Assembly (NCBI RefSeq): GCF_006345805.1
Contig: NW_021834549.1
Coordinates: 1 to 47,326, forward strand
Length of the DNA: 47,326 bases
Origin: Octopus sinensis
Taxonomy: Eukaryota
Direction: 5' to 3'
In this document: piece after piece, positions 2,488 to 47,080 of the stretch
Layout: every line of letters starts with the position of its first letter
Position numbering within the stretch: the first letter of the stretch is position 1
Translations under genes and position numbers: made by a program
Notes under the pieces: model-generated
Seen by the model: only the letters and a program-made list of their open reading frames with translations
Told to the model about the DNA's origin: nothing
The model's database searches: none

Positions 2488-3629
2488 TACTTCTTCACAG
2501 ACACAACTATAAAGAAAAGCCGTTTCTAAGTGTACCATTTTACTTGTAACTTAACCTCTAAACCAACCAGGGGTCCTTTTTTAAAACAGTGTGTTGTTGG
2601 AATGCTATATTAATCAATTAATCTATTTATTTGTTTGCTTATTTTATCTGTTCATTTTCTGACGTGGGGGTCAGAAGATTCGCGTCTATCTAAATACTTG
2701 AAACGATTTTTATAGCCTCAGAAATTACACATCATACATACATACATACATACATACATACATACATACATACACACAACATACATACTACACCATACAT
2801 ACACGCACATACATACACCACTACACACGTACATATATATATATATATATTATATATATATTATATATATATATATAATATGTATTTATGTATGTATGTA
2901 TGTATATTATGTATGTATATGATTATAAATATATGCGTGGGTATATATGTATAAATAATATATAATATATATATATATATAATCGCAAGAAATCTCGACG
3001 TTTATCTAATTATACAACAACAATATATATATATATCACTTGAACCTATACATAAAGTATGCTACTTATAGTAATTATTCATACAATTGTCAATATTCAT
3101 TATTATTTATTATCAAACATTAAACTCTATAAACAATTTAAAGGAACATTAATAGTGAAAAGATGGTGGAGTAATTTCCAGTAATAAACCAGTATAGCTT
3201 CCTCTGTTTTTATAGAAATATAAATCTATAGCAATCAATCCTAATGTTTCACTTACCTTCAAATGAAAAAAAATGAAGGGCAAAGACATCTGTCGTTTAT
3301 TTTATGTATCTTATACATTAAAGATTATTAGCATAAAAGGATTTCTACACAAACATACACACACATACAAGCACCTATACACAGATACAGATATAGCATA
3401 CGTACGCACGCACGCATATTCGCCACAGAAACACACACACACACCACACACCCACATATTGTGTATATATATTATATCTAAGGGTTTACAACGAGTTGAC
3501 CACATACCTTTATACATCAAAGGGTATAGCTATTTCTTCTACTAAAAGGGCTATCTCATAAAAACAATTTTGGAAGGCAGACACAACAGGCAAGAGAGAA
3601 TGAATTGACTGCAATTATCATCATTTTTT

Positions 3630-3745
3630 AGTTATCCACGACGTACGTTTCGAAATCAAGTTTTAAGGAAAGCATACGATTAAATATTAATATTAATAAT
3701 AAATAATTCTTCACCGAAACTTCTTTTTCTTCAGCGTAGAATACT
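3630..3745 (-). ncRNA. Type I hammerhead-like motif (left arm of fold-back 1), degenerate
   Basis: Minus strand reads CTGAAGA (3734-3728), ~75-nt stem II, then GAAAC-GTAC-GTC (3651-3640). The G10.1 position is A in this arm. Confidence 0.6.
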
Positions 3746-3870
3746 AAAATAATAACTGATTATATATTGAATCCTGAGATACCAGAAGGCACCATCCATC
3801 ATATAGAGCTTTGATCTAATTGGAGTTGGTCCTTCTGGTATCTCAGGATTCATATATATCAATGATTAAG

Positions 3871-3980
3871 TATTCTACGCTGAAGAGAAAAGAGTTTCGG
3901 TATAGAATTTATTTATTATTTATATTTAATATTAATTCGTATGCTTTCCTAAACTTGATTTCGAACGTACGTCGTATAAA
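3871..3980 (+). ncRNA. Type I hammerhead-like motif (right arm of fold-back 1), degenerate
   Basis: CTGAAGA-G at 3880-3887, extended stem II, GAAC-GTAC-GTC at 3963-3973 (one A of GAAA missing). Confidence 0.55.
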
Positions 3981-4464
3981 AAAAATGTATGATAGATTGC
4001 AGTCAATTATTCTCTCTTGCCTGTTTGTGTCTGCTTCCAAAGCTGTTTTTACTGAGATCCCCTTTTAGTATAAGAAATACTATAACCCTTTGACTGCTTT
4101 TCTAAATTCGCATGTGGTGGGGCAACTCGTTGCTAAACCCTTATTGCTTACATTACTTAAATTTTCCTCGAATGAGCTTTTACATGCCGAAGACACTTGG
4201 TGTAATTGATATTTTTCCAAATAATTAATTTCACCCTTCTTATTACGGATACTATATATATATATATATTTTATTTAGTTTCAGCTCACAAGCTGTGGCC
4301 ATGCTGGGGCACCGCCATTTGCTGGGGCACCGCCATATACATATATATATATATATATATATATATATATATATCTATATATATATATAAATATATATAT
4401 TATATATATATATATATATTATACATATATATATATATATATGCCTTTTATATTTCTTTTTATC

Positions 4465-4935
4465 TTGTACTTGTTTCAGTCATTGGATTGCGGCTAAGCT
4501 GGGGCACCGCCTTAATGGGTTTAGTCGAACAAATCAAACCCAGTATTTATTTTTCGTTTTTAAGACCAGTGCTTATTCCATCTGTCTCTTTTGCACAGCC
4601 GATAAGATATGGGGATGTAAACAGACCGACACCGATTGTCAGACGATGGTGAGAGTGACAAAGCTACACACACATACATTGAAACATACATACCTATGTG
4701 TGTGTGCGTATGTGTTCGTGCGTGTGTATGTGCATGTGCGTCTGTGTGCTCGCACTCATACACACACATATATACACAAGACGGGCGTCAAAATAGTGTT
4801 TGTTTACCAGATACACTCACAAGGCCTTGATCGGCCTGGGGACAAAAGTAGAAGACACTTGCTCAAGATGCGGTGGAGAGAGAATGAGCCCAAAACCGAA
4901 TGGTTGCAATGCTAGTGTATTGGTTGGTCAAAAGC
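4465..4935 (-). mobile_element. Near full-length degenerate SINE family B
   Basis: Tail (ttgtttcagtcatt..gcggc..ctggggcaccgcc), internal CA/TG microsatellite and head (agaagacacttgctcaag) in reverse orientation. Confidence 0.8.
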
Positions 4936-44940: not shown

Positions 44941-45738
44941 CGAGGGCTGATCAATAAGTATCCGGACCTGTTGCCATAGTAACGAAGCTAGAGCACACAG
45001 AATGAAGTCGCTTGACATAGATTAATTGACCTTGAACTCTGCTATGCATGCGCACTAAGTTTTAACGTTGTAGCTCACTTTTGCTGTTTACAGCAATGCC
45101 TGGAAGGAACGTGTGTAGCATGTCATCATAGCATTGACGACGACGGAGAAAGTTGTCATGGTGATACCTGTTTCAGAGGCCTACGCAAAGTTTTGGGAGA
45201 TCTGCAACCAGCAGAACTGAGAAAAACATCGCAGATGTGCGTGCAGTTGTGAGGGGAAATTATCGAATCACCATCGGTGAGTTATCAGAGGATGTGCAGA
45301 TTGGTTACGATTCCGTTCAGTCCATTATCACTGAAGATTTGGGCATGAGACGCGTGTCTGCCAAGTTTGTGTCAAAACTGTTTACAGCTGACCAAAAAGA
45401 CACTTGGGTTTCAGTTGCACAAAATCTCCTTGATTGTATCAAGAACGAAGAAATCTTTTTGAAAACATTGCGTAGGCCTCTGAACAGGTATCGCCAAGGT
45501 GCTGACAAAATTTGATGCAGATTCTCTGCTCAACTTTCTTTCATGGGCAATGCGATGATCACACGCTACGCACCTTCCTTCCAAGCACTGTTGTAAAATG
45601 CTGAAGTGAGCTATAACGCTAAAACTTAGTACGCATGCACAGCAAAGTAGAAGGTGAATCTGTGCCGAGCAGCTTTACTCTGCGTGCTTTAGCTTCGTTA
45701 CAAGGGTAACAGTCCGGATACTTATTGATCAGCCCTCG
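44941..45738 (+). mobile_element. Internally deleted mariner with long (~195 bp) terminal inverted repeats
   Basis: TA flanks (44939-40, 45739-40); perfect 27-bp outer TIR cgagggctgatcaataagtatccggac; ORF 45237-45515 encodes HTH and linker RITIGELSEDVQIG..SVQSIITEDLGMRRVSAKFV; no DDD domain. Confidence 0.93.
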
Positions 45739-46224
45739 TATAAATAAATTTATTGATAGACTTATAGGTATCAATGTATGTATGTATTATGTGTGTATGT
45801 ATGTATATATGTATGTAGGTATATATATATATATAATGTATGTATGTATGTATATTGTGGTGTGTGTGTGTGTGTGCAGACAGAGAGGCGGGGGCAGAGA
45901 AAAAGGTATATGTATGTGTGCGTGTAAAGTGAAAGAATTGATGGCGACTTTAACTCGAGCAAGTCTACCACTACAGTGTTGCGTTTCGAGGACTATATAT
46001 CTCTTCAGGCGGTGCAGTTAGACTGAAGCTGTCAGTGGATAGCTATAACGTGGGATGAATATAAAACTATCACAGCACCAAGTAATTCTTAATTCATATA
46101 GCTATTTGTTAAGTAATTTTGGTGTAAAATATTTTGCTAAAAATAATTATGACGATCCCATGGGAGTACAAACATCCTGTTACCAACTATATATGTCTCT
46201 ATGAAGTTAATTCCTCTATGGTTG

Positions 46225-46390
46225 AGCACGCGTGGCCTAGAGGATATTACCTTCACAATTGTGAGATCGTGCGTTCGATTCTCGAACCAGACGGTGCATT
46301 GTGCTCTTGATCAAAACGCTTCATCTCACTTTGCTCTGCGATCACCTCAACATTTGACGTGTGACACAGCGTGGATGACTGTGCAACTAA
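46225..46390 (+). mobile_element. Degenerate SINE family A2 head
   Basis: gcacgcgtggcctagagg..gcgttcgattctcg..ttgtgctcttgatcaaaacgctt. Confidence 0.55.
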
Positions 46391-47039
46391 ACAAATAATA
46401 TCGATTTAATGGAGGGAGGAGCTAACGAGCTGCACAAAGAGTTGATCGCTATAAACAAATCATCTGTACAGGTTGTTAAAAAAAAATTGCAGAACCATAT
46501 TCTTAAACTTGAGAGACTTCGGTTAATTCCATGTTGAGCACATTGTAATACTTTGCCTAGTATGACAATTCCATGTGATTGAGTAATGATGTTTTTATTC
46601 TTTTATTCTTTTGCGTGTGTCAGTCATTTGACTGCGGCCGTGCAGTGTTTGAAGTGTTTTAGTCGAACTAATCGAACCCAGGGACATATATAGTTAATGC
46701 AGTATGATAATTATCACATGTATTTACAGATAAATTCCTCTATTTACATAATATTGATGCCTCTTTCATTCTTTTGTTGTCTTGCCATATCTATCAATAT
46801 ATATATATATATATATATATATATGCTCAAATAAAGGTTACGAACCTCATTCAGGGATACCAAAATCCTATGAAAGAACTGGTCAGTTTCCTATACAAGG
46901 AATGTTGAACATTACAGTTAATACTAAAATGCAAGGTAACTATATAAACCGTGGTTTATATATATTTATTTATTATAAGATGGGAAAAGAGAGAGGTAAC
47001 AAATAAATTATTTTGTATTAATTAAAAAAATTGACAAAC

Positions 47040-47080
47040 ATTCTTTACAGCTGTTTCGATTTCAGACCTTCAGAAAATTA
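47040..47080 (-). ncRNA. Single degenerate minimal hammerhead motif
   Basis: Minus strand tttt-CTGAAGG-tctgaaatc-GAAAC-AGCT-GTA-aaga; A9 and stem II are imperfect. Confidence 0.45.

What the first reader, a model, noticed from the sequence alone, without database searches (positions are those of the whole stretch)
3479..47080. Recurrent architecture: non-coding fold-back elements with a hammerhead ribozyme in each arm, facing outward
Seen: five inverted-repeat elements (3479-4143, 6455-6685, 12961-13174, 25417-26118, 36466-37297) from at least four unrelated sequences share one plan. The left arm carries a minus-strand hammerhead motif and the right arm a plus-strand one. Stem III is an 8-bp palindrome (ACGTACGT, ACAGCTGT, ACATATGT) in the best copies and a near-palindrome in the others. 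Known: minimal type I hammerheads with palindromic stem III occur in Penelope-like element pseudo-LTRs and cleave as dimers, PLE ends can be inverted, and metazoan retrozymes are direct tandem repeats. Inference: these are solo head-to-head pLTR pairs, possibly a non-autonomous class of their own. A central bidirectional promoter would give two near-identical (not complementary) RNAs able to form the catalytic dimer in trans. Read-through transcription would instead give a long rod-like duplex that hides the ribozyme and is an ideal ADAR or Dicer substrate. Five in 47 kb implies a very large genome-wide number.
Basis: partly seen in the sequence, partly recalled or inferred. Interest (0 to 1): 0.92.

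Follow-up and report, generated by a model that had tools for sequence, protein, structure and literature searches.

The report
Inverted Penelope-retroelement ends carrying hammerhead ribozymes
One of the five palindromic elements is a genuine back-to-back pair of truncated Penelope-like retrotransposon ends, each with an intact hammerhead ribozyme, which is an insertion pattern already described for these elements; the other four are decayed, partial or chance look-alikes.

Summary
Partly confirmed, and largely explained by known biology. Inverted repeats are real for E1, E3, E4 and E5; E2 is weak. Only E5 (36466-37297) has an intact type I hammerhead in both arms, facing outward. E5 passes a strict descriptor (0.05-0.07 hits expected per shuffled window). 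It also matches a covariance model built only from hammerheads of Penelope-like elements (PLEs) from other organisms (E about 0.004). E1 has a decayed look-alike, E4 is at chance level, and E2/E3 keep only the 3' half (GAAA, palindrome, UA). All end in (TA)n or (CA/TA)n tracts, so the module is mostly solo here. A decayed RT + GIY-YIG ORF at 38117-39629(-) is a Hydra-clade PLE. That clade is reported to target (TA)n and always carry hammerheads. The 3'-terminal 20 nt of the 7189 copy matches a genuine PLE from another organism at 18/20. Genuine PLE loci from elsewhere, including the bivalve Solemya velum, hold the same outward-facing fold-backs. Head-to-head inverted pLTRs, dimeric ribozymes and microsatellite targeting are all published. 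Verdict: new members of a known kind; modest interest.

The parts
36466..36830 (-). E5 left arm: a 5'-truncated or non-autonomous PLE 3' module, read on the minus strand with its 3' end at 36466
   Evidence: Inverted repeat at 97-98%. No PLE coding remnant by tblastn.
36520..36607 (-). E5 left-arm type I hammerhead: cuuuc-CUGAUGA-GAAGAU..(structured insert)..GUCUUC-GAAA-CAUAUG-UC|gagag
   Evidence: Strict descriptor. External model R1 gives 17.9 bits, E 0.0036. The MFE fold recovers helices I and II.
36831..36933 (.). E5 central non-palindromic loop (103 nt), where the two truncated 5' ends meet
36934..37297 (+). E5 right arm: the same module on the plus strand, with its 3' end running into (TA)n
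37156..37243 (+). E5 right-arm type I hammerhead, identical to the left-arm one
37330..37415 (+). A further truncated module immediately after E5's (TA)n. It keeps only the 3' half of a hammerhead (GAAACAAUUGUA|) plus a PLE-like terminal tail (..AUACUCCAUUUUUCACUUAUUUAUUUAU).
   Evidence: palindrome site at 37351-37362. Sequence read. Tail compared by eye.
7189..7332 (+). Solo copy of the E5-family 3' module. It is 73% identical to the E5 arm over the last 140 nt. Its core is mutated (CCGAAGA, U4 to C) and H17 is A. The helices are kept through one-sided changes. It is embedded in (TA)n on both sides.
   Evidence: R1 gives 20.8 bits, E 3.7e-4. Its terminal 20 nt match the L028 PLE at 18/20, z 7.8.
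20298..20374 (-). Solo insert of about 80 nt: a complete hammerhead (ggcuuc-CUGAUGA-U-UUC-uuuu-GAA-U-GAAA-CAG..CUG-UA|gaagcu) plus a 23-nt tail. It sits at the edge of the large (TA)n array.
   Evidence: R1 best hit, 22.9 bits, E 7.6e-5. Sequence.
45915..46016 (-). Solo hammerhead module with an E5-like tail of about 50 nt, ending in a (CA/TA)n tract
   Evidence: R1 gives 17.6 bits, E 0.0045. Sequence.
38117..39629 (-). Decayed, 5'-truncated Hydra-clade Penelope-like element ORF (RT + C-terminal GIY-YIG). It covers residues about 172-708 of about 713 and has several frame breaks. No hammerhead is recognisable downstream of it.
   Evidence: No R1 hit between 37950 and 38116.
3479..4143 (.). E1 fold-back (arms 84% identical) with a decayed hammerhead-like motif in each arm: minus strand 3640-3734 and plus strand 3880-3973. 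Different family; membership unproven.
   Evidence: R1 gives only 7.7 bits, E about 10.
25417..26118 (.). E4 fold-back (arms 97-98% identical). Its hammerhead-like strings (25540-25573 minus strand, 25963-25996 plus strand) are at chance level. Nature unresolved.
12950..13180 (.). E3 fold-back of the E2/E3 family. Its arms keep only GAAACAGCUGUA| plus a tail of about 55 nt.
6455..6685 (.). E2: a weak fold-back of the same family as E3, lying between (CA)n and (GTAT)n
46975..47130 (-). Solo copy of the E2/E3 family ending in (TA)n. It has CUGAAGA 62 nt upstream of GAAACAGCUGUA, but helices I and II are poor.
   Evidence: R1 gives 9.6 bits, E 2.3.
5660..5706 (+). Solo fragment of the E2/E3 family

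Best explanation
WHAT IT IS
E5 is a head-to-head pair of two 5'-truncated (or non-autonomous) copies of the 3' end of a Penelope-like retroelement. This 3' end is the pLTR module. The element is of the Hydra-clade type, which targets (TA)n.

Each copy consists of:
- about 230 nt of non-coding sequence;
- a type I hammerhead with a long helix II and a loop-less, 8-nt palindromic helix III;
- a 62-nt tail that ends at a conserved terminal motif abutting (TA)n.

HOW IT AROSE (inferred)
Both outer ends are element 3' ends, because PLE reverse transcription is primed at the target nick from near the RNA 3' end. The truncated 5' ends meet in the middle. Two routes are possible, and this locus cannot tell them apart:
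- both strands of the target were nicked and extended, as shown in vitro for one PLE; or
- the nascent cDNA snapped back, or the RT switched template, as proposed for rotifer PLEs.

ROLE OF THE RIBOZYME
The hammerhead is a passenger of the pLTR. In tandem PLE transcripts, two copies pair through the palindromic helix III to form the active double hammerhead.

At this locus a read-through transcript would bury both ribozymes in a 365-bp hairpin. No function for the host needs to be assumed.

THE REST OF THE WINDOW
The same kind of module is scattered through the window as solo, variably truncated insertions in microsatellites. E1 is probably an older analogue from another family, but this is unproven. 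The E2/E3 family resembles copies that lack the 5' half of the ribozyme. E4 is unresolved.
For: SHOWN FOR E5 AND THE WINDOW
- Canonical hammerheads lie in both E5 arms. The strict descriptor finds them against 0.05-0.07 expected per shuffled window. The MFE fold recovers helices I and II.
- The covariance model R1, trained only on hammerheads from external Hydra-clade PLE loci, finds E5L and E5R (E 0.0036), the solo copy at 7189 (E 3.7e-4), 20320(-) (E 7.6e-5) and 45964(-) (E 0.0045).
- The 3'-terminal 20 nt of the 7189 copy match the L028 PLE terminus at 18/20, at the same position (z 7.8, 0 of 500 shuffles). E5 against L028 gives z 4.0. The contigs share no other repeats with the window.
- All supported modules end in (TA)n or (CA/TA)n.
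- The window holds a Hydra-clade PLE ORF relic at 38117-39629(-). Its 2843 relatives include full-length proteins of about 710 aa with RWR/RWK, DKT, a CxCX5C linker and GIY-YIG. These are the clade features listed in PMC8557442.

SAME ARCHITECTURE AT GENUINE PLE LOCI ELSEWHERE
- L028: arms 7041-7282 / 7379-7629, 98-99%, 96-nt loop. The inner parts of the arms are the 3' end of the ORF, the hammerheads face outward, and (TA)n lies at the end.
- L032 (Solemya velum): arms 11161-11261 / 11266-11366, 4-nt loop, helix III ACUACGUAGU.

FROM THE LITERATURE
[quoted passage not shown] Hydra-clade elements insert into (TA)n and universally have hammerheads (PMC8557442).
- Head-to-head is the most frequent inverted form, and self-priming was proposed to explain it (PMC3846280).
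- A PLE protein cleaves and extends both strands in vitro and initiates reverse transcription internally (PMC11167929).
- Minimal PLE hammerheads with palindromic helix III work as dimers (PMC4209133).

DIMER PREDICTION
- The predicted E5 dimer is -50.4 kcal/mol against 2 x -21.5 for monomers, with an intermolecular 8-bp helix III.
Against: - No E5 arm contains detectable ORF-derived sequence. In genuine Hydra-clade copies only about 100 nt separate the stop codon from the hammerhead. E5 has about 230 nt of non-coding sequence there, so a direct autonomous parent has not been identified.
- No other genomic copies of the E5 family could be retrieved, so there is no family consensus.
- The tail homology of E5 itself is modest (z 4.0). 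The strong match comes from its diverged relative at 7189.
- E5's helix II carries an insert of about 40 nt that none of the nine external examples has.
- Target-site duplications cannot be read inside microsatellites.
- The integration mechanism (priming on both strands, or snap-back) is inferred, not shown.
- Self-cleavage is untested.
Confidence: 0.8

Rival explanations
1. The fold-backs are a distinct non-autonomous class, a kind of 'inverted retrozyme'. The whole palindrome would be mobilised as a unit, and a central bidirectional promoter would produce two sense-ribozyme RNAs that dimerise in trans.
For: - E2 and E3 belong to one family, and both are fold-backs with similar arm lengths of about 105-115 nt.
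- E5's arms have no coding remnant.
- E5's centre contains TATAAA about 20 nt upstream of TCACT on the plus strand (read).
- The dimer is thermodynamically favourable.
Against: - Both the E5 family and the E2/E3 family also occur as solo copies that end at the same 3' terminus.
- Within E3, the two arms resemble each other more than they resemble E2's arms. That is expected if each palindrome formed de novo.
- Arm lengths and loop sizes differ widely between examples: 101 nt arms with a 4-nt loop, 242 with 96, and 365 with 103.
- In L028 the inner parts of the arms are PLE ORF sequence, so that fold-back is made of plain truncated copies.
- There are no transcription data.
Confidence: 0.08
2. 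The fold-backs are MITEs or Foldback-type DNA transposons with long terminal inverted repeats, and the hammerhead-like strings are incidental.
For: - The elements are short, non-coding and palindromic.
- Mariner-like transposase remnants are present in the window.
- For E4, E2 and E3 the hammerhead evidence is at or near chance level.
Against: - No target-site duplications are visible at E1, E3 or E4 (read).
- E5's motif is far above chance and matches an external PLE model.
- Solo single-arm copies exist. A TIR-dependent element would not produce them.
- E5's 3' terminus is homologous to a PLE.
Confidence: 0.07
3. The near-perfect palindromes E4 and E5 are artefacts of long-read assembly.
For: - Arm identity is very high (97-98%).
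- PLE tandem and inverted structures are known to disturb assemblies (PMC8557442).
Against: - The arms differ by substitutions and a 1-nt indel, and they enclose unique loops of 75-103 nt.
- Older, diverged fold-backs (E1 at 84%, E3 at about 80%) show that the structure persists in the genome.
- The same structures occur in independent assemblies of other organisms.
Confidence: 0.03

Closest known systems
Penelope-like element insertions with an adjacent inverted 5'-truncated copy (head-to-head pLTRs), especially the Hydra clade of C-terminal EN+ PLEs (Craig et al. 2021, PMC8557442; Arkhipova et al. 2013, PMC3846280)
   Same: - Each copy carries a type I hammerhead near its 3' end.
- The 3' ends face outward and the truncated 5' ends meet at the centre.
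- Insertion is into (TA)n.
- The 3'-terminal sequence is homologous to a genuine Hydra-clade element.
- The identical fold-back was seen here at real PLE loci (L028, L032).
   Different: - E5 has no ORF sequence in either arm and no full-length partner next to it.
- About 230 nt of non-coding sequence precede the ribozyme, against about 100 nt of 3' UTR in the external examples.
- Helix II carries an insert of about 40 nt.
Minimal or dimeric PLE hammerheads (Cervera & de la Pena 2014, PMC4209133)
   Same: - Type I topology with a G10.1-C11.1 pair.
- Helix III is reduced to a palindrome without a loop, so that two copies must pair to form it.
   Different: - The palindrome is longer: 8 nt, against 2-4 nt in the min-HHR descriptor. 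This is closer to the 9-10-nt palindromes of the Hydra-clade loci examined here.
- Helix II is much larger.
- Activity is untested.
Metazoan non-LTR retrozymes (Cervera & de la Pena 2020, PMC7229834; proposed to be PLE pLTR derivatives in bioRxiv 10.64898/2026.07.22.740005)
   Same: - Short, non-coding, hammerhead-bearing units of about 170-400 nt that probably depend on PLE machinery.
- Type I ribozyme with a palindromic helix III.
   Different: - Retrozymes are direct tandem repeats, so one transcript carries two sense ribozymes and can release a monomer that circularises.
- E5 is inverted, so a single transcript has only one sense ribozyme.
- No tandem copies occur in this window.
L1 'twin priming' inversions. 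This comparison rests on my own knowledge, not on a tool result.
   Same: An inverted, 5'-truncated retroelement structure is generated during target-primed reverse transcription that uses both target strands.
   Different: - L1 twin priming yields an inversion within one insertion (one poly-A end), not two outward-facing 3' ends.
- The enzyme (APE/RT) differs, and there is no ribozyme.

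Membership tests
Hammerhead ribozyme, type I | Conserved core: CUGANGA, then GAAA, then U-H at the cleavage site | tested here: met
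   - E5 (both arms): exact core, CUGAUGA / GAAA / UC.
- Not met by E2, E3 (no CUGANGA) or E4 (A9 replaced by C).
- E1: the core is exact, but one arm has lost an A of GAAA.
Hammerhead ribozyme, type I | Helices I and II flank the core in the correct register. Helix III is either closed or supplied in trans. | tested here: met
   - E5: helix I is 5 bp and extends further, and helix II is 6 bp. The unconstrained MFE fold recovers both.
- Helix III of E5 is an 8-nt palindrome that is predicted to pair between two molecules.
- E1: helix I is one nucleotide out of register.
- E4: helix I is only 3 bp.
Hammerhead ribozyme, type I | Match to a curated or independent covariance model | tested here: inconclusive
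   - The Rfam hammerhead families do not hit, even at E<=10 on a 200-nt sub-window.
- A model built only from external PLE hammerheads does hit E5 at 17.9 bits, E about 0.004. Calibration is rough.
Hammerhead ribozyme, type I | Site-specific self-cleavage | not testable with these tools
   This needs in vitro transcription of a single E5 arm, of two arms in trans, and of a tandem dimer.
Penelope-like element pLTR / 3' module (Hydra clade) | Sequence homology of the 3' terminus to a genuine PLE | tested here: met
   - The 7189 copy against L028: 18/20 at the extreme terminus, z 7.8, 0 of 500 shuffles.
- E5R against L028: z 4.0, 2 of 500 shuffles.
Penelope-like element pLTR / 3' module (Hydra clade) | Insertion into (TA)n microsatellites | tested here: met
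   E5, the 7189 copy and the 20320 copy abut (TA)n. The 45964 copy abuts (CA/TA)n. The clade trait is described in PMC8557442.
Penelope-like element pLTR / 3' module (Hydra clade) | Physical linkage to an RT + GIY-YIG ORF, or ORF-derived sequence in the copy | tested here: not met
   tblastn with ten Hydra-clade proteins finds coding remnants only at 38117-39629(-), and none in any E arm. E5 is therefore a non-autonomous or UTR-only copy, and its autonomous parent is not identified.
Penelope-like element pLTR / 3' module (Hydra clade) | Tandem or inverted arrangement with 5' truncation; optional one-sided 'tail' extension; variable or absent TSD | tested here: inconclusive
   - Head-to-head arrangement and truncation: met, and the same is seen in L028 and L032.
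- Tail: not seen at E5.
- TSD: unreadable inside microsatellites.
Metazoan non-LTR retrozyme | Direct tandem repeats, each with a sense hammerhead, able to release a circular RNA monomer | tested here: not met
   The E5 copies are inverted. No direct tandem of any hammerhead module occurs in the window.
MITE / Foldback DNA transposon | Terminal inverted repeats flanked by a fixed-length target-site duplication; copies always have both ends | tested here: not met
   No TSD is seen at E1, E3 or E4. Single-arm solo copies exist for the E5 and E2/E3 families.

The most novel reading that the evidence does not exclude
E5 and its relatives could be a non-autonomous lineage that hijacks Hydra-clade PLE machinery. 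It would do so through a shared module of hammerhead plus about 20 terminal nucleotides. Its frequent fold-back insertions would then be functionally exploited. They could serve as hairpin dsRNA sources that feed small-RNA silencing of PLEs, or as bidirectionally transcribed loci whose two sense RNAs form the active double hammerhead in trans.
Probability: 0.1. Interest if true: 0.55.

Novelty: new member of a known kind. Interest (0 to 1): 0.25.

Why it matters
For annotation:
- The window comes from an invertebrate-type genome that is dense in Penelope-like debris. There are five model-supported hammerheads in 47 kb.
- Rfam's hammerhead models miss all of them. Standard annotation will therefore not flag these ribozymes, or the palindromes they sit in.

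For biology:
- E5 and the external examples L028 and L032 are clean, small instances of the head-to-head products of PLE integration. They could help discriminate priming on both strands from snap-back models. The 4-nt loop in the Solemya example favours snap-back or template switching.

Limits:
- Nothing here changes the current picture of hammerheads or PLEs.

Tried and rejected
- Rfam at gathering threshold, at E<=10, and on a 200-nt sub-window gave no hammerhead. The E<=10 scan returned only sub-threshold chance matches, chiefly microsatellite-driven 'mir-297'-type hits. Rfam is uninformative for this ribozyme type.
- A viral-contig scan with an E5 core pattern gave 26 hits. All are coding coincidences (an EEKIA-type peptide) with no 3' half of a hammerhead.
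- The metagenome scan with a two-block E5/solo pattern gave one hit, L027. It is a phage-like coding contig without CUGANGA, so a chance match.
- I searched the long antisense ORF of the E5 arm against the protein collection, hoping to pull in other genomic copies. Nothing was found.
- Exact-ORF look-ups meant to identify the host found nothing on record. The host remains unknown.
- Pfam on the window's ORF fragments gave only a weak RVT_1 hit. The exhaustive HMMER search was needed instead.
- E4 as a hammerhead was rejected as chance level.
- E2/E3 as hammerheads were rejected, because no conserved 5' core appears in six family members.
- I looked for homology between the four families. None was found beyond a 16-nt stretch, UUCGAAAC.U..GUCG, shared by E5 and E1.
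- I considered the PLE ORF relic at 38.1-39.6 kb as E5's parent. This was rejected: the sequences do not align, the two are separated by other repeats, and no hammerhead is left downstream of the ORF.

Full report
OBSERVATION

The window is AT-rich (about 35% GC) and full of microsatellites and transposon debris.

Inverted repeats are real for four of the five listed elements:
- E5: arms 36466-36830 / 36934-37297, 97-98% complementary, 103-nt loop.
- E4: arms 25417-25730 / 25806-26118, 97-98%, about 75-nt loop with (GTT)n.
- E1: arms 3479-3794 / 3812-4143, 84%.
- E3: arms 12950-13027 / 13099-13173, about 80%.
- E2: only a weak inverted repeat.

The elements fall into four sequence-unrelated families: E5, E1, E4, and E2 with E3.

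HAMMERHEADS

Rfam reports no hammerhead at its gathering thresholds, at E<=10, or on a 200-nt slice around the best motif. The E5 motif is canonical by inspection, so Rfam's models cannot see this type. The reasons are the large helix II and the loop-less helix III.

I therefore used two independent tests.

Test 1: a descriptor search with dinucleotide-shuffled controls.
- The strict descriptor hits only the two E5 arms: cuuuc-CUGAUGA-GAAGAU...GUCUUC-GAAA-CAUAUG-UC|gagag. Shuffled windows give 0.05-0.07 such hits.
- Allowing one core mismatch adds a site at 7197-7270(+).
- Dropping the palindrome requirement admits E4, but at that stringency shuffled windows give about 5.5 hits.

Test 2: a covariance model built only from nine hammerheads taken from genuine PLE loci of other organisms. 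With filters off it finds the following in the window:
- 20320-20374(-): 22.9 bits, E 7.6e-5.
- 7189-7278(+): 20.8 bits, E 3.7e-4.
- Both E5 arms: 17.9 bits, E 0.0036.
- 45964-46016(-): 17.6 bits, E 0.0045.
- E1 reaches only 7.7 bits (E about 10). The E2/E3-family copy at 47038-47081 reaches 9.6 bits (E 2.3). E2, E3 and E4 are not hit.

The unconstrained MFE fold of the E5 ribozyme recovers helices I and II. E1 and E4 do not fold in a hammerhead-like way.

THE WEAKER ELEMENTS

E1 has an exact CUGAAGA, a long rod-like helix II and GAAACGUACGUC. Three defects remain:
- the left arm has an A10.1/C11.1 mismatch;
- the right arm has lost one A of GAAA;
- in both arms helix I is shifted by one nucleotide, so that it would pair C17.

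E1 contributes to a real enrichment. The pattern 'GAAA + 8-nt Watson-Crick palindrome + H, with an exact CUGANGA within 140 nt upstream' occurs 4 times against 0.04 expected. On its own, though, E1 is a decayed or non-canonical motif.

The E2/E3 family has six copies: four arms plus solos at 5660-5706(+) and about 46975-47130(-). It conserves AGAAACAGNUGUAAG and a tail of about 55 nt, but no 5' catalytic half.

E4's CUGAUGc..GAAA string lacks A9, lacks a palindrome, and is statistically unremarkable.

WHAT THE SUPPORTED MODULES ARE

The 3'-terminal 140 nt of the E5 arm has a diverged (73%) solo relative at 7192-7332(+), embedded in (TA)n on both sides. That copy preserves helices I, II and III through one-sided changes, but its core carries U4 to C.

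The two newly found sites are also solo. One is an insert of about 80 nt at the edge of the large (TA)n array. The other has an E5-like tail of about 50 nt ending in a (CA/TA)n tract.

A further fragment with a PLE-like terminus sits immediately after E5's (TA)n, at 37330-37415.

So the recurring unit is 'hammerhead + short tail + microsatellite', truncated at its 5' end to varying degrees and mostly solo. Only E5 is a fold-back.

LINK TO PENELOPE-LIKE ELEMENTS

Frames at 38117-39629(-) encode residues about 172-708 of a protein of about 713 aa, with several frame breaks.
- It has 2843 relatives in the exhaustive search.
- Full-length relatives show an RT (..YRDDGL..NFLDVTLDL..) followed by a C-terminal GIY-YIG nuclease. 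They also carry RWR/RWK, DKT and a CxCX5C linker.
- These are the features Craig et al. give for the 'Hydra' clade of PLEs. The clade is found in aquatic invertebrates including molluscs. Almost all of its families insert into (TA)n, and canonical hammerheads are 'universally present' (PMC8557442).

I fetched genomic loci encoding such proteins: L028-L030 and L032-L037. Their hammerheads lie about 100 nt after the stop codon. Helix III is a loop-less palindrome of 9-10 nt. A tail of about 50 nt follows and ends at (TA)n, while internal tandem copies read on past that point.

The extreme 3' terminus of the window's 7189 copy (UUAACUCCAUUUUUAUUCAU) matches the L028 terminus at 18 of 20 bases, at the same position (z 7.8, 0 of 500 shuffles). 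E5 against L028 gives z 4.0. The contigs share no other repeats with the window. This ties the E5 family to Hydra-clade-type 3' ends.

THE FOLD-BACK ARCHITECTURE IS GENERIC TO PLES

- L028 holds a fold-back with arms 7041-7282 / 7379-7629 (98-99%) and a 96-nt loop. The left arm has a minus-strand hammerhead and the right arm a plus-strand one. The inner parts of the arms are the reverse complement of the 3' end of the PLE ORF. The left end abuts (TA)n, and the right end carries an extension before (TA)n.
- In the bivalve Solemya velum (L032), the model found a pair it was not trained on, at 11204-11259(-) / 11268-11323(+). This is a fold-back of about 205 bp with 101-nt arms, a 4-nt loop, helix III ACUACGUAGU, and (TA)n on both sides.
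- L030 shows head-to-head ORF copies and an inverted pLTR upstream of an ORF.
- L029 and L034 show plain tandems.

The literature describes the same things:
- Head-to-head is the most frequently observed inverted form. [quoted passage not shown]

MECHANISM

Shown in the literature:
- A PLE protein initiates reverse transcription near, and internal to, the RNA 3' end. In vitro it cleaves and extends both target strands. The ribozyme is dispensable for insertion (PMC11167929).

Inferred:
- E5 arose in a (TA)n tract. Either both strands were primed, or the cDNA snapped back or the RT switched template. Either route gives two outward-facing 3' ends and a central junction.
- The near-zero loop in the Solemya example favours snap-back or template switching. 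E5's 103-nt loop fits either route.

The ribozyme:
- Helix III has no loop, so the ribozyme needs a partner.
- RNAcofold predicts an intermolecular 8-bp ACAUAUGU helix, with a dimer at -50.4 kcal/mol against 2 x -21.5 for monomers.
- A read-through transcript of the whole element pairs all 82 ribozyme nucleotides with the other arm (-643 kcal/mol).
It follows from the known dimeric PLE hammerhead (PMC4209133).

WHAT IS NOT ESTABLISHED

- The host organism is unknown.
- No other genomic copies of any family were retrieved.
- E5's autonomous parent is unknown. Its arms carry no ORF remnant, and about 230 nt of non-coding sequence lie upstream of the ribozyme.
- Target-site duplications, transcription and cleavage are all untested.
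- E4 remains an unexplained young fold-back.

VERDICT

E5 is a genuine head-to-head pair of PLE 3' modules with intact hammerheads.

The 'five elements, one plan, a new class' reading is not supported. The architecture, the dimeric ribozyme and the microsatellite targeting are all published. This is a new member of a known kind, with modest interest.

Noticed in passing
Both are solo, 5'-truncated PLE 3' modules abutting microsatellites. The first is the best hit in the window to the externally trained model.
   Followed up: yes
window 38117-39629 (-): A decayed, 5'-truncated Hydra-clade Penelope-like element ORF (RT + GIY-YIG, with a remnant of the CxCX5C linker). No hammerhead is recognisable downstream of its stop codon.
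   Followed up: yes
L032 11161-11366 (Solemya velum, GCA_048127485.1): A miniature fold-back of about 205 bp made of two hammerhead modules of about 100 nt each. The loop is 4 nt and helix III is a perfect 10-nt palindrome (ACUACGUAGU). The right arm has GAAA mutated to GCAA. The tiny loop points to snap-back or template switching during integration.
   Followed up: partly
window 13180-13240, 17800-17960, 20417-20520, 21440-21560, 23850-24010, 32880-33010, 35490-35615: A recurrent SINE-like repeat containing GGGACTGAACCCGAAACCATGTGGTTGGGAAGCAAACTTCT. It shows up as the pseudo-peptide '..[17 protein letters not shown]'. ARAGORN calls no tRNA in the window.
   Followed up: partly
window 23678-23953, 26796-27290, 37411-37640: Another dispersed repeat family, seen as the pseudo-peptide '..RRAGR.VSTP....LS..'. 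One copy lies between E5 and the PLE ORF relic.
   Followed up: no
window 2001-2315 (-), 40961-41482 (-), 45025-45659: Remnants of mariner/Tc1-like transposase. These are the C-terminal 'HPPYSPDIAPSDFHLF' motif and HTH-like N-terminal parts. The last is bracketed by an inverted repeat, 45025-45143 / 45541-45659 (81%).
   Followed up: no
window 19640-20315: A (TA)n-rich array of about 680 bp with many internal inverted and direct repeats. It serves as a landing pad for the 20320 hammerhead module.
   Followed up: partly
window 26118-26310: A tandem repeat of about 40-bp units (..tcaaatatgaacat.t.ttttggtca..) lies immediately to the right of the E4 fold-back.
   Followed up: no
window 36873-36900 (+): The E5 loop contains TATAAA about 20 nt upstream of TCACT. 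This resembles the TATA/Inr pair reported in a rotifer pLTR (PMC3846280). It is purely a sequence observation.
   Followed up: no
window 10000-11300: The most GC-rich stretch of the window (about 43%), with open frames on both strands. It could be a host exon or promoter region.
   Followed up: no
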